A stretch of DNA of 64,000 nucleotides, taken from contig NW_026928756.1 in NCBI RefSeq assembly GCF_032062105.1, positions 124,001 through 188,000 on the forward strand, written 5' to 3'. Position numbers and translations under genes: made by a program. The notes beneath the pieces were generated by a model that was not told where the DNA came from, ran no database searches, and saw only the letters and a list, made by a program, of their open reading frames with translations. This stretch comes from Saccostrea cucullata (Eukaryota). Positions 36,001 to 63,111 of the stretch are shown here, piece by piece (the stretch's first letter is position 1; the number at the start of each line of letters is the position of its first letter).

Positions 36001-37390
36001 TGAAAACAATTCAACATACTTTGTAATGACTCAGGGTTTTCAGCAAATAAAACAGTGTCATCAGCATACAACAGAGCAAAAAGCTTAAAATATACATGAA
36101 GTTCATTCTCAATAATTTCAGATAATTTCTCTAGACCAGTTATATCATTCATGGTGAGGAATGATTCTAAATTATTTAAATAGAGAGAGAACAGAAAAGG
36201 GGATAAATTTTCACCCTGTCTTACACCAAGTTGACAAGAGAAAGTACTCCTTTTGCACTTGGTGTAAGAATGCTACAGGTATCGTTTACAATTTTGTCAA
36301 TAAAATCTGTATCGATTTCTTCCTCTTTAATATTGTCTAGAATTCTACATAAATTGTTAATTTCAAGATTTTTCTGAACTAATTTTTTAAGAAAAATGTG
36401 TTGCAAGTCATCATTCCAACCTTTAGCTTTTTCTTTTTGTTCGCTATTACAAGTATTTTCATTATTAGTATTTCGCTTCTCTTGGTTAATTGTCAATGAT
36501 AGTTCTACATAAATAGGATTATGACAATCAGAATATAGTTTTGAAAAATCATGAACTTAATTCGAAATTTTTAACAACAGTCAAAAATTCAGTATTACCT
36601 ATGCAATAATCTATGACACTAATACGTTTACATGTAGTTTTACCAGTACATCTATCATTTCCCATACGACCATTCAAAATAAAAAGATCAGTACGTTTGC
36701 AAAAATCGAGTAAAAGTTTTCCAAAATTATTCTTGACTAGGTCTTGTGATGAACGTTGAGGTGGAATATTAAGTAAGTCTAATACATATAAGCTTTCAGG
36801 TAAAAAATCACAATAAGTGTCACAGTTAGTAGTGTAATCTGGGTCTATTCCAGTTCTTGCATTAAAATCACCAATTAAACAAACGTATTTACACTTATTA
36901 GAAAAACGAACACATTCTTCTTCAAATTCTTCAAAAATATCACAAGATACATATTTAGTATTCAGGTGGTACGTAAATAGCGCCTAAAAGTAATGTTTCA
37001 TTGAACACTTTTTTTATTAAGGTTGAATTTTAACCATAAAACAATATTATCACAGATAATTCAATTTATGCCGCTATGAGAAATATATTATATTTTACAC
37101 CTAAGGATAATTCTGCATATCCCTGCGCAGTCTGCAGGATATGCGCCCTTATCGCAGCGCAATTATCATAGAATCTTTCATTGCGAAATCGCACCTTATT
37201 TTGCTTGACAGAGTTATCCAATCAAAATCCTTGATTTTGTTGCGCCATTTTGGTTAGCCTGGCAGTGCATTGAAAAAACTTAAAATGCTCAAGCTCCTCT
37301 TATGGATTCTATGTTGATATCTGTGTTGAATGGCAAATTTTTCATTCAAATTCATTTTCTCCAACTCGTACTGCCAATGAACATCATATA

Positions 37391-37565
37391 CAGTAAAACT
37401 CGGTTATAACGAAGTCGCTGGGACGCATGAAGTTACTTCGCTATATCCGTAATTCATAACAACCGTACAAGAAATTTATTAAATTTATACAGCTGGGGAT
37501 CCAAATTGAATTCGCTATATCCGTGAATTCGCATTATCTGTGTTCGTACTAAACGAGTTTCACTG
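37391..37565. mobile_element. Tc1/mariner (pogo-like) MITE
   Basis: TA|CAGTAAAACTCG...CGAGTTTCACTG|TA. Confidence 0.85.
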
Positions 37566-37799
37566 TATAGAGTAGTCAGCACCTGTTATTCATTTAATGT
37601 GTAAAATAAGATTTGGCAATATATTAGCTTCTTATGTAACATTAATTGTTCTATCATTGATGTTGTAAATCTGGTCATTAGTCCAGTAAAGTGTTTATCA
37701 AATATTCCACAATGTACATCCTCTATAGTCATCAACTCTGTATAACTCAGCTCAATTTTAAAGTCTTCATAGTCGGCTTACTGATATCAATGAGTTCAG

Positions 37800-38395
37800 C
37801 ATTTAAACTTGCCTGCATAGTCTTTGAGCTACATGTAAGATGACGGCTACTGATTTAAATTGTATGTTGAAATCTACCCGCATAGACTTGAGTGAAGATA
37901 CATAGTTCAGCAGAGAGCTGCTTATGTAAATTGTGCTTCAAAATCTGCTTGCATAGTCTTGAGTTAAGATACATTAGTTGAAGTTCAGCGGATAGCTGCT
38001 CATGTGAATTGTGCTGCAAACTCTGCTTGCATAGTCTTGAGTTAAGACACAAGAGTTCAGAGGATAGCTTCTCATGTAAATTGTTTGTTATAATCTGCTT
38101 GCATAGTCGAGAGTTAAGATACATGACTTCAGCGGATAGCTGCTCATGTAAATTGTATAATAAAATCTGGCTTGCATAGTCTTGAGTTAAGATACATGGC
38201 TTCAGCGGATAGCTGCTCATGTAAATTGTATAATAAAATCTGGCTTGCATAGTCTTGAGTTAAGATACATGGCTTCAGCGCATTGCTGCTCATGTAAATT
38301 GTGTGTTAAAATCTGCTTGCATAGTCTTAGTTCAAGATACATGAATTCAGCGGATAGCTGCTCATGTAAATTGTATGTTAAAAACTCTGGCTTCT
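37800..38395. repeat. 72-73-bp minisatellite, ~8 units
   Basis: GCTTGCATAGTCTTGAGTTAAGATACAT..TTCAGCGGATAGCTGCTCATGTAAATTG at 38097, 38170, 38243, 38315, plus more degenerate upstream copies. Confidence 0.9.
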
Positions 38396-38539
38396 TTTGA
38401 TCCACAATTTAACAGCTAACAGGTGAATGTTAATGTCTTTGTTGCATCAGTACTTGTTATTTGTCAAGAACACCTAGTCTAAAATGTATGTGATATCATA
38501 TGAACTTCAACTTCAATGTTGTTTTATGTATTTGCAAAG

Positions 38540-38573
<34 letters not shown>

Positions 38574-40589
38574 TTCAAAAAATGCTGTAAATTTCAGTAT
38601 TTTTACTATTTTTATAAAAATTTTTTGTTTTGATTTTTCTCCTTGTTTGGTGTCTTAACCCCTCACTGCGTGACACTGCAACATGAGGGCTTGTGGTGCA
38701 ATTGTTTGACGCCTCCAAGGATTTACTCATTTATGTTATATTTTATGCATATTTACATGTACTCTTATATGTTCACTGCATGTAAATTTCTAGTCAGTCT
38801 CAGGGGGATCACACTTGTACCTTTCACCTGTGTACATGTAACCTGTATTGTTTAATATTAGATGATCCCCCTTAATGATTTGTTATACATTTTACTATAT
38901 GTCATTGAATAAAATGACATATTCGACTAAACTGCATATCTGTGTTTGGTTGTTTTTCACTCCACTTTCAGGCATGTATTTTCATAGGAGGCATAAAACA
39001 ATATTATCACAGATAATTCAATTTATGCCGCTATGAGAAATATATTATATTTTACACCTAAGGATAATTCTGCATATCCCTGCGCAGTCTGCAGGATATG
39101 CGCCCTTATCGCAGCGCAATTATCATAGAATCTTTCATTGCGAAATCGCACCTTATTTTGCTTGACAGAGTTATCCAATCAAAATCCTTGATTTTGTTGC
39201 GCCATTTTGGTTAGCCTGGCAGTGCATTGAAGAAAAAAAACCCACCACCCACCCTTTTTGGGGTTTTTGGTTATATATTATTTTGCATTTTAGTCCAGAT
39301 TTGTATTTTTCTAACTTGTCATATATTTTTTGATTGGCGCAATTGTTTGAACGCCCCCAAAGATTTACTCATTTATGTTATATTTTATGCATGACATGTA
39401 CTCTGATATGTTCACTGCATGTAAATTTCTTAAAAGCACAGTCTCGTACGACAATGTTTGGACGCCTCCAAGGATTTACTCATTTATGTTATATTTTATG
39501 CATATTTACATGTACTCTTATATGTTCACTGCATGTAAATTTCTAGTCAGTCTCAGGGGGATCACACTTGTACCTTTCACCTGTGTACATGTAACCTGTA
39601 TTGTTTAATATTAGATGATCCCCCTTAATGATTTGTTATACATTTTACTATATGTCATTGAATAAAATGACATATTCGACTAAACTGCATATCTGTGTTT
39701 GGTTGTTTTTCACTGCACTTTCAGGCTGATATTTCTCATAGGAGGCATAAACAATGTTTACTTGCAGTATCTATTAATTCTAGTGAATTGACGAGTGTTT
39801 CTCTAACAAAACCAACAATAGCACCTGATTTAAAGCGAGATAACTCGCGAAAGTGCTTTCCAAACATTTTAAAACCAGGTATTATTACATGATCTGTATC
39901 ATCAGTTTTAGATTCATTTACACATATATGATATCATGATTTGTGATATATTCAATAAAATCTGTACAGTTAATTTTACTTATTAAACCACAGACATTAA
40001 CGAAGTGAAACAGGATATTTCACCACAGGAACTGCGTCCATCCTTCTCAAGTCCCTAGTATCCTGATTGTCCGGAATGATTGAAGTCCATTGGGGCGGAT
40101 CCGCTGACTGGACTTTAATTCAGTTTTCGGTAGCGTTATTTCAATGTTCACTGACCTGAGGCAGTATCGTAGTTCGTCGTATAAAGAAATTGTGCAACCT
40201 TCTCCAGACCGAACCAGTTTTCCAACTTTAAGCCAAATAGTAAGTACATTTGTAAATCAGGTCAAGACAATATATTTATAAGCAAATTTTGTTTCTCTAG
40301 AATTTTGATGATTTTAAACAATCTGTTGAGAGAGTGATATGGAAATTTTGAATGTGTTAAATTCAAGATGATTTAATTCATTCGGATCTTCGTTGTACAT
40401 CGAAAATATTTACATGGTTTATAAAGATGACACAATTTTTATTTTGACAGAAGGTATGCCGATTGCGTAGTAAATTTTCTCTGAGGCACCTTTATGATTT
40501 CTATATCGAGAAGGGAAATTCCCAATTCACCTCTCCTTTAATTGTTTCTTTTTGCATTTTTTAGGGTTTTCCTTTGGTGAACAGATATT

Positions 40590-58014: not shown

Positions 58015-61000
58015 TTATTGAAATGTGTGCATTCAAAAACATAATGAAATTCATCACCAATCTTATAAAGATCATAAAGTACAAATCCTTTGTTCTCTTA
58101 GAAGACCATTCCATCTCCCAGTATCAATAGGGAGTTTAAAGTTGTTACATCAAAATTAACAAAATTGAAAATTTTCTAGGTAGATTAACAAGATATCTTT
58201 CTGGTTCTCGTATTTTTTTTTATAAATACGATAATTTACACCCTTTCATGAGTTAAAAACATTTCTTTGCCAGTTTTGGATATTTTGATCAACAAGTATT
58301 CCTTTTATTTCATTTTTTACCCATGCGACACTGTACATCTGTTGTGTTGTCCATAAATAAGATAAACCACAATCATTTAAAATGTTTTTAACATAGTTAG
58401 CACAAGGTAATTTATGCCTTAATGCTAATACATACATTTTTGTAGCAAATTTATCCATCGTTTGAGAAAAATGTAGTTTTGCCCAAAAAGAAATCATTCT
58501 CACCTTAATATTAAGGAAAAGTGGGAATCTGTCAAGTTTCCCATATACCATGTAATTTGGCGTTTTATTCTACAAACCTAGTATATATTTACAATATTTT
58601 GAGTGAAGTTTTTCGATTAGAGTATTTTTTGTAAATCCCCATATTTCACATCCATATAACAAAACTGGCTGTACAATTCTGTCAAACAAATCTATCTGAC
58701 AATCAATAGAAAGATTATGTTGTTTACATTTTGATATCACTCCATACATAGCTTTTACAGATTTATTGTATTGTTCTTTTATATTTTGATTTTAAAAACC
58801 TGATTTTGAAATAAATATATTCCTAAGTACTTATAACTATCAACAATCTCTAGACTAAAACCATCATAGGTAAAATATAAATCCTGTGTTATTCGACCTC
58901 TTCCAAAAAACATTATTCTTGTTTTGTCGACATTTACTTTTAATCACCATTTTATACAATAACATGAAAACTTTTCAACATACTTTGTAATGACTCAGGA
59001 TTTTCAGCAAATAAAACAGTGTCATCAGCATACAGCAGAGCAAAAAGCTTAATTTGACATGAAGTTCATTCTCAATAATTTCAGATAGTTTCTCTAGACC
59101 AGTTATATCATTCATGGTTAGGAATGATTCTAAATCATTTAAATAGAGAGAGAACAGAAAAGGGGACAAATTTTCACCCTGTCTTACACCAAGTTGACAA
59201 GAAAAAGTATCTGAAAAACCACCATTTACTTTAAGTTTTGCCTTGATACCCTCATACCTTTTCTTGATTATTCTAAAACATTTTCCATCTATATTGCAAT
59301 CAAATAGTATTTTGTTCCAGAGTCCTATTCTCCATACAGAATCAAAAGCTTTTTCAAAATCAATAAAGGCACAATATATTCTTTTTTGAAAACCTTTTCG
59401 AATATTTCGATGATCGTATGCAAAGAAAATATATTATCAATTGTACCATAATTTTTACGAAATCCAGCTTGATTTTCTTGTATTGTTTTGAATTCTTCTG
59501 AATATCTGTTAAGTCTATTATTTAAAATGGATGTAAATAACTTTCCAACACAACTAATTAAAGTTATTGGGCGATAATTTGTGGGTTCAGTATCATCACC
59601 ATTACTCTTATAGATAGGAATAATTTCACCACACAACCACTCGGAGGGGAAACAACCACTGTTAAGAATTTTGTTGAATATTTTTTTATAGAGGGGCACC
59701 ATTATGTTGAATGAGCTTTTAATATATTCATTGTATATGTCATCACTTCCACATGATTTGTTTCTTTTAAGACTTTTTATACTTTGCATTATTTCATCAC
59801 AAGTTATCGGTTCATTTATAGACTCATTACACTGTAAATTAGAGAGAATATCTATATCCTCATTTGATAAAACATAGTCAGGTATTTCATTATCTTTTTC
59901 CGTATTTAAATCTTTAAAAAATTCATATAATTCCTCAGCAGGTGCATTTTCATTATTTCTATTTTTTCTCCCAGAGTTTATTATTTTCCAGTATTCTTTC
60001 GGGTTTGTCGATTTTAGTGTTTTTTCAATTTTTCTTTTGTTTGATTTTTATGGTTATTTACACACATGTTCAACATTTTTTAAATATTTTTTTTACTATA
60101 CATATCGTATTTGAGATCTTTACTTCTATATCTCTGGAAGCGTTTTTTAGCCTTACGAAATGTTTGTCGTGCGTTGTAACATTCTATTGTAAACCAAGGG
60201 TGGTGAAAATCTATTTCTTTGATTATTTTTTATCCCAAATGTTTCTTTTGCACTTGTAAGGATGCTATAGGTATCGTTTACAATTTTGCCAATAAAATTT
60301 GTATCGATTTCTTCCTCTTTAATATTGTCTAGAATTCTACATAAATTGTTAATTTCTATATTTTGCTGATCTAATTTTTCAAGAAAAATATGTTGCAAGT
60401 CATCATTCCAACATTTAGCTTTTTCTTTTTGTTCGCTATTACAAGTATTTTCATTATTAGTATTTTGCTTCTCTTGGTTAATTGTCAATGATAGTTCTAC
60501 ATAAATAGGATTATGACAATCAGAGTATAGTTTTGAGAAATCATGAACTTCAAAATTTTTAACAACAGTCAAAAATTCAGTATTACCTATGCAATAATCT
60601 ATGACACTAATACCTTTACATGTAGTTTTACTAGTACATCTATCATTTCCCATACGACCATTCAAAATAAAAAGATCAGTATGTTTATAAAAATCGAGTA
60701 AAAGTTTGCCAAAATTATTCTTGACTAGGTCTTGTGATGAACGTTGAGGTGGAATATTAAGTAAGTCTAATACATATAAGCTCTCAGGTAAAAAATCAGA
60801 ATAAGTGTCACAGTTATTAGTGTAATCTGGGTCTAATCCAGTTCTTGCATTAAAATCAACAATTAAACAAACGCATTTACACTTATTAGAAAAACGAACA
60901 TATTCTTCTTCCAATTCTTCAAAAACATCACAAGATACATATTTAGAATTTTCAGGTGGTATGTAAATAGCGCCTTAAAGTAATGTTTCATTGAACACTT

Positions 61001-61280
61001 TTTATTAAGGTTTAATTTTAACCATTAACGATGTTTACTTGCAGAATCTTTTAATTCTAGTGAATTGACGAGTGTTTCTCTAACAAAAACAACAATACCG
61101 CCTTATGTAAAGCGGGATAACTCGCGACGGTGCTTTCCAAACATTTTAAAACCAGGTATTATTACATGATCTGTATTATCAGTTTTAGATTCATTTTCAC
61201 ATATGATATCATGATTTGTGATATATTCAATAAAACCTGTACAGTTAATTTTACTTATTAAACCACAGACATTAAGTGAA
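58015..61280 (-). mobile_element. Decayed non-LTR retrotransposon ORF2 (RTE-X-like), copy 2
   Basis: Endonuclease ('SLNVCGL', 'DFNARTG', 'SDCHNP'), RT ('NYRPITLISCVGKLF', 'QAGFR', 'SPFLFSLYLND') and C-terminal Zn motif; many frameshifts. Confidence 0.92.
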
Positions 61281-61977
61281 ACAGGATATTTCACCAGAGG
61301 AACTGCGTCCATCCTCCTCAAGTCCCTAGTATCCTGGGGCCCGTTTCACAAAACTATCTTAAGATTTGTCCTTAGACAGATCTTAAGACAATCTTAAAAT
61401 CTGACTTACGACAATCATAAGATTTGTCACTGCTGTTTCACAAAACTGTCTTAAGTAGCTGAAATCTTAAGACAAGTTTTAAGATGTATCTCGCGCCACA
61501 ATGTTATAGAGAATGTTATAAAGGACAAATTAAAACAAAATATTAATAATTTTTGTTCTAAGTTAAGATTTCGTCAAATACATTTATGTGTAGATATTTT
61601 CAATGTTGTAAATAAAAGTTTTCTTAAATATTGTAAAGGAGTTTTTTGATCGAAAATAAAATGTTAATTTTCTTAATACATTTACAGTGTTCACATTTTT
61701 GGAGGGGCAGGGGGGGGGGTCGGATTGGAAGCAATAATGCTGATTTGTGAAGTCATATGTGTGAAAAAAAGAAGACAAATTTGTATGTCAAAAAGTATTT
61801 TAAAAATGCATTTGTTTGATAAAAAATAAATATCAATTCTGTTTAAAATAAATTTAAATTTGATCCACCAACGCATTTGCCTTTGCATACAAGTAATGAA
61901 TGGTGTTCGAATGTATTTATCTGTGACCACAAAACGGATACAAAGTCTGTGCGCTCGGAAAGAAATCTACTAAGAAA

Positions 61978-63111
61978 ATGGCTCTGAAAAGAAGCCCAAA
62001 GTTCAGTTTGGCCGAAATCACTGTGTTAACGGACGAAGTCGAGAAAAGAAAAGACATTCTCTTTTCCAAGAAAAATTCAACAGTTTCCAAATCGTTGAAG
62101 AAGGAAACATGGAACAAAATAGCTACAAAGGTAAATGCTGTAAATGCGTCAGACCACATCAGGTCCGGAGAAGAAATGGATCTGCTTAAGCAGCGAAAGC
62201 AGAAAAAAACTAGCTTTGAAAAGAAGAGAACAGAAAAAGACAGGGGGAGGATCCTTGCCATCTGGGGCTTGCGACCAATAGATTAAAAAATTGAGGGGAT
62301 CATCGGGGAAACATCCATTTCGGGAGTTGAGGGGGGCATTGACGTTTTAGAGGCAGAGATGGTACGGGAAACGCCACCAAGCGGGAGCACAGATGTTGTA
62401 AATGGTATGTGTAAGACTGATACAAGTTCAAATTTCCGGTAACAAAAAAGGGGGGGTCTACAATTTCTTATCTATTTAAGCAATCCTGTAAATGGTGAAA
62501 AGTAAAAAGCATGTTATTTTCCGTAAAAATAAAAGTTAAATAGCTTACGTAAAATTTCTTACAAAGGTACTAGAGGATACGCAGAGCGGATATTCTCTAC
62601 ACTGTAAGAAAAGTCGTATGCAATATAGAGGAATGATTTTTGTGTGATATTTTTTTGTTTTGTTAATTTTTCATAAGATTATGTAATACTCCACATGAAA
62701 TTTTAAATTAAGATAAAATAAACAAAATTAATGTTTTAATATTTTTTAAGAAAAAAAGTTTTGTGATTTTGTTTACAAAAATTTCGTATTCTTGGTTGTA
62801 AAATATGAATTTTGTTTACAGAAAAAAGACTTGCCGATGAAAAGCCAGCAAAGAAACGAATGAAGAAATTTCTTAATCCCTGTAATGAGGCCCTCACATT
62901 AAAACTTGTTGAAGCAGAGGAAGAGATGCTGGGTGTGGGAAAAAAGGGGTTAGAAATCGAGGAAAAACGATTGAAAATTGAAGAACGGTGACTTGAAGTT
63001 GCAGAGCAGCAACTTCAATTACAACGTGAACAACAAACGCTTCACCTCTGTCAGCTTGGAATAGTTAGCAATGCGACAGTAACAGTCAATGCCCCTTCTG
63101 ATAATAAATAA
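61978..63111 (+). pseudogene. Harbinger Myb/SANT-like DNA-binding protein, 2 exons, disrupted
   Basis: 'RSPKFSLAEITVLTDEVEKRKDILF...W..IA..VNA' trihelix motif. Intron ~62405-62821, coiled-coil exon 2. Frameshift near 62180-62280 and an in-frame TGA near 62989. Confidence 0.8.

What the first reader, a model, noticed from the sequence alone, without database searches (positions are those of the whole stretch)
37035..39755. Non-coding split-direct-repeat element: candidate non-autonomous tyrosine-recombinase retrotransposon with its empty site in the same window
Seen: the layout is A1 - internal region - B1 - A2 - B2. The 240-bp A copies look identical and the ~285-bp B copies differ mainly in their last ~35 bp. 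There are no TIRs or LTRs and no RT, RNase H or YR ORF. The left end (aac|CATAAAACAAT|att), the internal B1/A2 junction (gag|GCATAAAACAAT|att) and the right end (gag|GCATAAACAAT|gtt) share one core, which matches the uninterrupted LINE site in copy 2 (aac-CATTAACGAT-gtt, 61023-61032). Known: split direct repeats define Ngaro/PAT DIRS-group elements, which integrate a circular intermediate with a tyrosine recombinase. Inference: this is a recently active parasite of such an element, keeping only the cis signals and integrating by recombination between its circle junction and a look-alike genomic sequence.
Basis: partly seen in the sequence, partly recalled or inferred. Interest (0 to 1): 0.85.

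Follow-up and report, generated by a model that had tools for sequence, protein, structure and literature searches.

The report
Gene-less Ngaro-type tyrosine-recombinase retrotransposon copy
This 2.7-kb stretch is a young, gene-less, internally deleted copy of a Ngaro-type (tyrosine-recombinase) retrotransposon family of a bivalve genome; one copy elsewhere in the genome still has all three reading frames open, so this is a well-supported example of a known kind of mobile DNA, not a new kind.

Summary
The layout is A1 (37035-37274), internal region, B1 (38699-38998), A2, a 216-bp spacer, then B2 (39452-39751). There is no ORF, TIR or LTR. A paralogous LINE copy in the same window is uninterrupted at the insertion point.

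A and B are dispersed: 192 A-starts and 30 B|A junctions in the genome. All 13 composite copies sampled have the same order. A1/A2 and B1/B2 of one element share private variants (99-100% within an element, 97% median between elements). So both copies are remade at each transposition, like LTRs.

Solo A-B units occur. One locus exists in both composite and solo form.

The ends overlap the internal junction GGAGGCAT-AAAA-CAATATT in an AAA run. There is no target duplication. Flanks resemble the junction (AT-AAA-tAAyaTT).

Coding relatives exist. L025 has the same A1 followed by an RT/RNase H ORF and a decayed recombinase. By coordinates, contig C7816 carries A1, open frames of 382 aa (ORF1), 613 aa (RT/RH) and 332 aa (YR), and the same B|A junction.

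There is no room for a methyltransferase domain, so the family is Ngaro-type. The circular intermediate and the exact crossover point are inferred. Novelty: a new member of a known kind.

The parts
36250..37037 (.). Left flank: the host LINE copy that the element interrupts
   Evidence: Aligns at 94% to the second LINE copy at 60245-61028.
37038..37041 (+). Left end: the AAAA run in which host and element sequence meet (CAT-AAAA-CAAT)
   Evidence: In 16 independent left ends AACAAT is invariant, and the A-run is 2-6 long.
37035..37274 (+). A1, the 5' split direct repeat
   Evidence: Identical to A2 apart from the 3' edge. Near its start it holds the palindrome ATTATC-aca-GATAAT.
37279..37391 (+). 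Internal region joined directly to A1, marking a deletion of about 4.8 kb relative to the long copies
   Evidence: In L003 this sequence lies 4.8 kb downstream of A1.
37392..37563 (.). Nested MITE with CAGTRAAACTCG inverted ends and a TA target duplication
   Evidence: Its empty site is seen in L003, and it is also absent in L002 and L024. The same MITE sits at the same place in L001, L004, L005, L011, L012 and L013.
37856..38383 (+). Tandem array of 72-bp units, 7.2 copies
   Evidence: Tandem Repeats Finder result. The array is also present in the long copies.
38536..38570 (+). Internal A35 run inside a ~99-bp stretch that L003 lacks
   Evidence: Not explained.
38699..38998 (+). B1, the internal copy of the 3' repeat, with AATAAA at 38908-38913
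   Evidence: 98% identical to B2. Its last ~35 bp carry a private cluster of changes.
38976..39040 (+). The B1|A2 junction (GGAGGCAT-AAAA-CAATATT) inside an imperfect palindrome
   Evidence: The junction is constant in all composite copies and occurs 30 times in the genome. It folds as a hairpin with z = -3.86.
38992..39231 (+). A2, the internal copy of the 5' repeat
39236..39451 (+). Spacer between A2 and B2: about 100 bp of unique sequence S plus a partial copy of the first ~100 bp of B (39336-39430)
   Evidence: S plus 0-2 partial B copies is found in all composite and solo copies.
39452..39751 (+). B2, the 3' repeat, ending in GGAGGCATAAA, with AATAAA at 39661-39666
   Evidence: GAGGCATAA(A) is invariant in 17 right ends. 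Family reads diverge after 39751. RNA fragment ends pile up at 39680.
39752..40065 (.). Right flank: the same LINE copy continues
   Evidence: Aligns at 93% to 61023-61336.
61023..61032 (+). Uninterrupted paralogous site (CATTAACGAT) in the second LINE copy

Best explanation
Window 37038-39751 is one young insertion of a non-coding, internally deleted member of a Ngaro-type retrotransposon family. These are tyrosine-recombinase retrotransposons of the DIRS order with split direct repeats.

The family's integrated form is A1-[body]-B1|A2-spacer-B2. One copy on another contig has open ORF1, RT/RNase H and recombinase frames, and other Ngaro families of this genome do too. Those could supply the proteins. 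Which of them does so is not shown.

Inferred mechanism. A plus-strand transcript starts in A1 and is polyadenylated inside B2, about 70 nt before the element's end. Reverse transcription uses the internal B1|A2 copy to restore the missing ends. This gives an intermediate whose B end is joined to its A start, classically drawn as a circle. The recombinase then exchanges strands between the AAA(A) of that junction and an AAA in a genomic look-alike of the junction. No target duplication results.

After insertion, recombination between A1 and A2, or between B1 and B2, leaves solo A-B units.
For: Shown:

- The repeats are dispersed and keep a constant order in 13 composite loci. There are 192 A-starts and 30 B|A junctions.
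- A1/A2 and B1/B2 of one element share private variants. Seven of 8 A pairs are 99-100% identical. The 13 B pairs range from 95.3 to 100%, and 10 of them reach at least 98.3%. The median between elements is 97.4-97.6%. In the older element e06 both pairs are 95-96%.
- Left ends always carry (A)nCAAT and right ends always carry GGAGGCATAAA. The junction holds only four A, so the two ends overlap in AAA, and there is no duplication beyond it.
- Flanks resemble the junction. The right flank matches 62 of 119 positions against 38 expected, and the best of 35 control offsets gave 47. The left 'AT' matches 19 of 32 against 10.7. In this window the host site inferred by joining the two flanks, CAT-AAA-CAAT, matches the 11-nt junction core CAT-AAAA-CAAT except for one A fewer in the run.
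- L025 has a family-type A1 and 5' region in the sense orientation. It then has an intact 613-aa RT/RNase H ORF (RVT_1 3e-6, RT_RNaseH 4e-4, both below Pfam's cut-offs; E = 1e-16 to a DIRS1-like RT). A frameshifted recombinase follows immediately.
- The 5' region plus the start of the ORF is collinear in four loci at 90-100% identity. Non-coding copies share its first 750-910 bp.
- On the minus strand of contig C7816 lie: A-starts at 67529 and 60404 that share a private variant; the B|A junction at 60391-60420; and open frames of 382 aa (ORF1), 613 aa (RT/RH, 96%) and 332 aa (YR, 94%).
- L010 and L023 are the same locus in composite and solo form.
- The same nested MITE sits in at least 7 copies at different loci. 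So the non-coding form itself is copied.
- Family reads appear in a poly(A)-selected RNA run while the flanks read zero. Fragment ends pile up 14 nt after the AATAAA.

From the literature:

- Ngaro has the layout A1-[ORFs]-B1A2B2 and leaves solo AB repeats (PMC8547959).
- Ngaro lacks the methyltransferase domain, and its internal repeats lie downstream of the recombinase (PMC4157794).
- DIRS-order elements are thought to integrate at a trinucleotide shared by the circle junction and the target (PMC7192593).
Against: - No DNA of C7816 could be fetched. Its open frames, A-starts and junction are known only from coordinates and frame lengths. Its B2 and its catalytic residues were not seen.
- L025's 3' end was not seen, and its recombinase and ORF1 are broken.
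- No circle, cDNA or recombination event was observed. Reads that join a B end to an A start cannot be told apart from the internal B1|A2 junction.
- The RNA library appears unstranded and its depth profile follows copy number. Transcription of this particular copy is therefore not shown.
- For DIRS-1, experiments favour mostly linear single-stranded cDNA (PMC7192593). The circle may be wrong in detail.
- The A-run at left ends varies from 2 to 6, so the crossover point is not fixed to the base.
- This 2.7-kb deletion form was found only here.
Confidence: 0.88

Rival explanations
1. The element is a non-autonomous rolling-circle element (Helentron/HINE-like) that carries a satellite array. The A..B-A..B order would be a head-to-tail dimer made by read-through of a terminator.
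For: A 72-bp tandem array sits in the body. From general knowledge, bivalve Helentron derivatives carry such arrays. The ends lie in an A/T run, and a 6-3-6 palindrome lies 4 nt from the A start. Monomer-like A-B units exist.
Against: - Private variants shared by A1/A2 and B1/B2 are not expected for a dimer copied as a whole.
- The two 'units' have different bodies.
- The coding relatives carry RT/RNase H and a tyrosine recombinase, not Rep/helicase.
- Solo units are explained by recombination seen at one locus.
Confidence: 0.03
2. The element is a tyrosine-recombinase DNA transposon (Crypton-like) or another circle-integrating DNA element. It would move without reverse transcription and be inserted twice in tandem.
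For: There are no TIRs or LTRs. The ends carry a short shared core, and the target resembles the joint. Cryptons have short direct repeats thought to be recombination substrates, and they have abundant non-autonomous derivatives (PMC3212892).
Against: - The family's coding members hold an RT/RNase H ORF upstream of the recombinase.
- The split direct repeats are regenerated within each element.
- An AATAAA with a pile of RNA fragment ends lies in B.
- Published Cryptons lack long direct repeats (PMC3212892).
Confidence: 0.04
3. This copy is a dead relic. It was a full-length non-coding (or coding) element that lost 4.8 kb by deletion after insertion, so the 2.7-kb form was never mobile as such.
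For: The A1|internal deletion joint at 37278/37279 was found in no other locus or run. Other copies carry different internal deletions (L010, L012).
Against: A1 and A2 are still identical over 240 bp, so little time has passed. A deletion during reverse transcription would look the same. This rival concerns only this one copy's history and is compatible with the family assignment.
Confidence: 0.45
4. The pattern is a local tandem duplication or an assembly collapse, not a mobile element.
For: None beyond the repeat pattern itself.
Against: There are hundreds of dispersed copies with different flanks. The paralogous site is uninterrupted. The family is present in runs from many studies.
Confidence: 0.01

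Closest known systems
Ngaro retrotransposons (DIRS order; Goodwin and Poulter 2004, as described in PMC8547959 and PMC4157794)
   Same: The split direct repeats follow A1-[body]-B1A2B2. The coding relatives have the ORF order ORF1, RT/RNase H, tyrosine recombinase. There is no methyltransferase domain. The internal repeats lie downstream of the recombinase. There is no target duplication. Solo AB repeats occur.
   Different: This copy and most family members have no ORFs at all, and tandem repeats fill their bodies. A 100-430-bp spacer (unique S plus 0-2 partial B copies) lies between A2 and B2. Non-coding members far outnumber coding ones.
PAT-like elements (DIRS group with split direct repeats)
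   Same: Same repeat layout, and same enzyme set apart from one domain.
   Different: PAT elements encode a methyltransferase-like domain (PMC4157794). In L025 recombinase homology starts 52 nt after the RT/RNase H ORF ends, so there is no room for that domain.
DIRS1-like elements (inverted terminal repeats plus an internal complementary region)
   Same: A tyrosine-recombinase retrotransposon for which integration at a trinucleotide shared with the junction has been proposed (PMC7192593). One such 4.8-kb element is nested inside A2 of the C18423 copy.
   Different: DIRS1-like elements have inverted repeats, not split direct repeats. Their RT is only 23% identical to this family's RT.
Solo LTRs and the non-autonomous LTR derivatives LARD and TRIM
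   Same: The repeats are regenerated at each cycle and so are identical at insertion. Solo forms arise by intra-element recombination. Non-coding derivatives depend on proteins supplied in trans.
   Different: The repeats here are split (A and B), not whole LTRs. There is no TG..CA end, no fixed-length target duplication, and the enzyme is a recombinase rather than an integrase.

Membership tests
Ngaro (YR retrotransposon) | Split direct repeats in the order A1 ... B1 A2 B2, with A1=A2 and B1=B2 | tested here: met
   met in the window and in 12 other composite loci; the pairs are identical or nearly so within one element.
Ngaro (YR retrotransposon) | Family members encode RT/RNase H | tested here: met
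   L025 ORF of 613 aa: RVT_1 3e-6 and RT_RNaseH 4e-4, both just under Pfam's cut-offs. BLASTP gives E = 1e-16 to a DIRS1-like RT. More than 1600 bivalve and other homologues carry PF00078. The ORF is linked to A1 and the shared 5' region in four loci.
Ngaro (YR retrotransposon) | Family members encode a tyrosine recombinase downstream of the RT | tested here: met
   tblastn with a 332-aa Pfam-positive recombinase (PF00589, 3e-15) hits L025 6151-7081 in three frames. The C7816 copy is 94% identical there and lies in a 332-aa open frame. Catalytic residues of the family's own recombinase were not inspected.
Ngaro (YR retrotransposon) | No methyltransferase domain, which separates Ngaro from DIRS1 and PAT | tested here: met
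   The RT/RNase H ORF ends at L025 6099 and recombinase homology begins at 6151. No further Pfam domain was found.
Ngaro (YR retrotransposon) | Internal repeats (B1A2) lie downstream of the recombinase in the same orientation | tested here: met
   On the minus strand of C7816 the recombinase lies at 62287-61907 and the B|A junction at 60420-60391. A1 and A2 starts are at 67529 and 60404. This rests on coordinates only.
Ngaro (YR retrotransposon) | Integration without target duplication, at a short sequence shared with the junction | tested here: met
   Sixteen left ends and 17 right ends overlap the junction in AAA, with no further duplication. The paralogous empty site agrees. True orthologous empty sites were not available.
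Ngaro (YR retrotransposon) | RT and recombinase cluster with reference Ngaro sequences in a phylogeny | not tested
   No reference Ngaro proteins were available by reference. The classification rests on structure alone.
Ngaro (YR retrotransposon) | Moves through an RNA copy and a joined (circular) cDNA | not testable with these tools
   Only indirect signs exist: family reads in a poly(A) RNA run and fragment ends after the AATAAA. Junction reads are ambiguous with B1|A2.
PAT-like | Methyltransferase-like domain between RNase H and the recombinase | tested here: not met
DIRS1-like | Inverted terminal repeats plus an internal complementary region | tested here: not met
   No inverted terminal repeats. 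By contrast, the element nested in C18423 has them.
Helitron / Helentron / HINE | Rep/helicase partner, a 3' hairpin terminator, and copying as a whole without regenerating the repeats | tested here: not met
   The coding relatives carry RT and a recombinase. The repeats evolve in concert within each element.
LTR retrotransposon / LARD / TRIM | Two whole LTRs and a fixed-length target duplication | tested here: not met
Retrozyme / Penelope-like | Hammerhead ribozyme in the repeats | tested here: not met
   An Rfam scan at E <= 1 gave only three chance-level hits and no ribozyme.

The most novel reading that the evidence does not exclude
The family gives a sequence-level picture of how a eukaryotic tyrosine-recombinase retrotransposon chooses its sites. 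It integrates into genomic look-alikes of its own B|A junction (about AT-AAA-tAAyaTT against CAT-AAAA-CAATATT), with the exchange in the AAA. The junction lies inside a palindrome that could be the recombinase's binding site. In addition, gene-less copies outnumber coding ones and spread a 72-bp satellite array and a hitch-hiking MITE through the genome. Neither point is established in the open-access papers I could search.
Probability: 0.35. Interest if true: 0.55.

Novelty: new member of a known kind. Interest (0 to 1): 0.35.

Why it matters
- Tyrosine-recombinase retrotransposons are the least understood order of retroelements. Their integration specificity has not been measured directly (PMC7192593).
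- This family is young and moderately abundant. Its junction, both ends, many flanks, its solo forms and a copy with all three frames open are all readable, so it is a convenient natural data set for that question.
- It shows that a non-coding derivative can dominate a Ngaro family. It also shows such a derivative carrying satellite arrays and a nested MITE to new loci.
- For genome annotation, 640-850-bp A-B units and ORF-less 2.7-9-kb elements in this bivalve should be filed under DIRS/Ngaro, not under 'unknown' or Helitron-like repeats.
- It is not a new class of element.

Tried and rejected
- Fetching the coding copies failed. C7816, C5422 and C16017 were therefore mapped by coordinates only.
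- A scan for recombinase genes (PF00589) gave at least 1184 candidates. The 12 loci fetched had no DNA similarity to A, B or the body, so that route to the partner was abandoned.
- The database protein search with the L025 RT found only relatives of at most 62% identity, from Pinctada, Saccostrea and Mizuhopecten. It gave no near-identical protein, so public contigs could not supply the partner.
- The long ORFs between A2 and B2 in the C18423 copy first looked like the partner in reverse orientation. They are a nested DIRS1-like element with its own inverted repeats, inserted inside A2.
- The Helentron/HINE reading and the simple TSD reading (CATAAACAAT as an 11-bp duplication) were both considered and rejected. 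All other copies carry the same element-borne AACAAT and GCATAAA whatever their flank.
- Rfam gave no ribozyme or tRNA-like part.
- Reads gave no empty allele. Flank depth in the only raw DNA run was 1-4. They also gave no usable circle junction.
- The earlier-findings look-up returned nothing by place or by sequence.
Full report
**1. Observation**

- A1 (37035-37278) and A2 (38992-39235) match over 244 nt. The single difference sits at the 3' edge, so about 240 nt are truly repeated.
- B1 (38699-38981) and B2 (39452-39734) are 98% identical. Their differences cluster in the last ~35 nt of B1. That variant end is found in no other locus held.
- Between A2 and B2 lie ~100 nt of unique spacer and a partial copy of the start of B.
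- The body holds a nested MITE, a 72-bp tandem array (7.2 units) and an A35 run.
- No ORF is credible. The longest, 131 aa, lies on the minus strand inside the array. No terminal inverted or long terminal repeats exist.

The flanks belong to a LINE that has a second copy in the window.
- 36250-37040 aligns to 60245-61028 at 94%, and 39746-40065 aligns to 61023-61336 at 93%.
- Only six bases of the paralogue are used by both alignments.
- So the whole A1..B2 block is one insertion of about 2.7 kb.

**2. A dispersed family with a fixed order**

- Searches of the window's own 1.17-Gb genome found at least 312 candidates for A and 315 for B. The 40 scored for each were 92-100% identical.
- A 29-nt A-start pattern occurs 192 times and the 30-nt B|A junction 30 times. 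Both have zero hits in the reversed controls.
- Thirteen loci have the composite form A1-body-B1|A2-S-(partial B x0-2)-B2.
- Most have a 6.5-9-kb span and a body without ORFs but rich in tandem repeats.
- The window copy is an internal-deletion derivative. Its A1 is joined at 37278/37279 to sequence that lies 4.8 kb further in.
- L017, L018 and L022 are solo A-S-B units with clean flanks. L013 is a solo A-body-B unit.

**3. The repeats are remade at each cycle**

- Across elements, A copies differ by about 2.6% (median identity 97.4%).
- A1 and A2 of the same element share private variants. Seven of 8 A pairs are 99-100% identical.
- The 13 B1/B2 pairs range from 95.3 to 100%, and 10 of them are at least 98.3% identical.
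- Elements e03, e04, e10 and e24 are clear cases.
- In the older element e06 both pairs have drifted to 95-96%.
- In e02 and e20 only the B pair is low (96.6% and 95.3%). There the first ~100 nt of B2 are of the partial-B type.
- A dimer copied as a whole would not behave this way. It is what LTRs do, and what split direct repeats of DIRS-order elements are expected to do.
- The same nested MITE (TA duplication; empty site seen in L003) sits at the same position in at least seven copies with different flanks. So the non-coding form itself is what is copied.
- L010 and L023 share both flanks at 95-97% but are composite and solo respectively. This shows that solo units arise by A1/A2 recombination at a locus. 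The same was proposed for solo AB repeats of Ngaro in Cafeteria (PMC8547959).

**4. Ends and targets**

- The internal junction is constant..CATAGGAGGCAT-AAAA-CAATATTATC...
- All 16 independent left ends carry AACAAT preceded by an A-run of 2-6. All 17 right ends carry GAGGCATAA(A).
- Joining the two ends would give more A than the junction has. The ends therefore overlap in about AAA, and nothing else is duplicated.
- The flanks are not random:

| Flank | Matches to the junction | Expected | Control offsets |
|---|---|---|---|
| Seven bases after the right end, against CAATATT | 62 of 119 | 38 | mean 38.9, maximum 47 (35 offsets) |
| Two bases before the left A-run, 'AT' as in the junction | 19 of 32 | - | mean 10.7, maximum 16 |

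- In the right flank, A at +2 occurs in 14 of 17 ends and T at +7 in 15 of 17.
- In this window the host site inferred by joining the two flanks, CAT-AAA-CAAT, matches the 11-nt junction core except for one A fewer in the run. The paralogue reads CATTAACGAT.
- The junction lies inside an imperfect palindrome. GGCATAAA pairs with TTTATGCC of A, around the inner ATTATC-aca-GATAAT. It folds with z = -3.86, and 1 of 200 shuffles folds as well.
- This fits the published idea that DIRS-order elements integrate at a trinucleotide present both at the junction of the element's ends and in the target (PMC7192593). That a recombinase makes the exchange here is inference.

**5. Coding relatives**

Locus L025 (contig C6057) begins with a family-type A1 and the family's 5' region.
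- It continues in the same orientation into a 613-aa ORF with RT and RNase H matches. These are RVT_1 3e-6 and RT_RNaseH 4e-4, both just below Pfam's cut-offs.
- That ORF is 23% identical, E = 1e-16, to the RT of a DIRS1-like element.
- It has more than 1600 homologues, mostly from bivalves, annotated with PF00078.
- Immediately after it, recombinase homology runs through three frames (tblastn with a Pfam-positive 332-aa recombinase).
- An ORF1-like frame upstream is broken by a few stops.
- The stretch that spans the shared 5' region and the start of the ORF is collinear in four loci at 90-100% identity. Non-coding copies share only its first 750-910 nt. So the ORFs belong to the family and are not a chance nested insertion.

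Contig C7816 could not be fetched, so it is known by coordinates only. On its minus strand:

| Feature | Position | Detail |
|---|---|---|
| A-starts | 67529 and 60404 | share a private variant |
| B\|A junction | 60391-60420 | one mismatch |
| ORF1 match | 64490-64756 | 96% identity, in a 382-aa open frame |
| RT/RH | 62650-64302 | 96% identity, 613-aa open frame |
| Recombinase | 61907-62287 | 94% identity, 332-aa open frame |

- That is the canonical A1-[ORF1, RT/RH, YR]-B1A2 layout with this family's junction.
- There is no room for a methyltransferase domain between RNase H and the recombinase. By the structural classification of PMC4157794 the family is therefore Ngaro-type, not PAT or DIRS1.
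- Other Ngaro families of this genome have RT/RH, recombinase and a GDSL/SGNH-type hydrolase ORF.

**6. Reads**

- Twenty public runs from 12 studies hold parts of the stretch.
- In a poly(A)-selected RNA run the element is covered on both mates while the LINE flanks read zero.
- Eight fragment ends pile up at 39680, which is 14 nt after the AATAAA at 39661-39666. This fits a plus-strand transcript that ends inside B, short of the element's end, as the split-repeat model needs.
- The evidence is modest. The depth profile follows copy number, and the library seems unstranded.
- Reads that join a B end to an A start exist in both RNA and DNA runs. They cannot be told from the internal junction of other copies.
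- No read skipped the insertion. Flank depth in the raw DNA run was only 1-4, so polymorphism is untested.

**7. Rivals**

- A Helentron/HINE-like rolling-circle dimer was my main alternative at first, because of the satellite array, the A/T-run target and the terminal palindrome.
- It fails on the concerted repeats, on the different bodies of the two 'units', and on the RT/recombinase partner.
- A Crypton-like DNA element fails on the RT ORF and the regenerated long repeats.
- LTR-type, retrozyme/Penelope and local-duplication readings fail on the tests listed under membership.
- One question stays open: was this copy's 4.8-kb deletion made during reverse transcription or after insertion? The deletion joint was seen nowhere else.

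**8. Verdict**

- An earlier follow-up in this scan reached the same verdict for a 7.4-kb gene-less element of this genome. That length matches the long form here (7.35 kb in L003), but I could not check that it is the same family.
- The element is a new member of a known kind. Its value lies in the clean definition of the junction, the ends, the target look-alikes, the solo forms and the open-frame copy.

Noticed in passing
window 37392-37563: A ~172-bp MITE with CAGTRAAACTCG inverted ends and a TA duplication is nested in the element. The same insertion is carried by at least 7 family copies at different loci, and its empty site is seen in L003. The MITE therefore spreads by hitch-hiking on the retroelement.
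   Followed up: yes
L014:6363-10000 with L015:1-3163 (G000:C18423 about 594363-599163): A 4.8-kb DIRS1-like element with inverted repeats lies on the minus strand. Its ORFs are a 303-aa ORF, an RT of 437 aa, an RNase H-like ORF of 198 aa, a 180-aa ORF, and a 266-aa ORF with a Phage_integrase match (2e-10). It is inserted inside A2 of a family copy at the position equivalent to window 39060-39069. AAGGA appears on both sides.
   Followed up: partly
L028-L033 (for example L028:820-3494, minus strand): Another Ngaro-like family has RT/RH, a 332-aa recombinase and a ~208-aa GDSL/SGNH-type hydrolase ORF (weak Pfam match). Six loci carry a 332-aa recombinase frame, which suggests it may be active. 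Its RT is about 44% identical to that of L025.
   Followed up: partly
window 38950-38991: The last ~35 nt of B1 in this copy carry a cluster of changes (G>C, TGA>ATG and a 1-nt deletion). These changes are absent from B2 and from every other locus held, even though A1 and A2 are identical. The cause is unknown. It could be an error of reverse transcription or a local conversion.
   Followed up: partly
window 38468-38570: A ~99-nt stretch ending in an A35 run is present here but absent from L003. It may be a small retroposed insert or a tail-like tract inside the element.
   Followed up: no
L010 (C3994) and L023 (C19388): These two contigs hold the same locus, with flanks 95-97% identical. One has a composite element and the other a solo A-B unit. 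They are probably haplotigs or a recent duplication.
   Followed up: yes
L020 (C15906) and L021 (C12869): These two contigs hold the same insertion with the same right flank. They are likely haplotigs, so copy counts in this assembly are somewhat inflated.
   Followed up: no
L025:8074-9999: An ORF with aspartyl-protease and RT matches (RVT_1 3e-22), typical of LTR retrotransposons, follows the decayed recombinase region of the coding relative. It is probably a nested insertion that separates the element from its 3' repeats.
   Followed up: no
G000 contigs C1140, C2071, C2332: A related subfamily has an A-start variant (CACGG), a junction variant (CAATTTT) and a constant A1-to-junction spacing of about 5.0 kb. 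Its internal region is 70-72% identical to that of L025. Its coding status is unknown.
   Followed up: no
window 36250-37037 with 39752-40065, and 60245-61336: Two copies of one LINE-like repeat, 93-94% identical, lie 24 kb apart in the window. Only the first is interrupted.
   Followed up: partly
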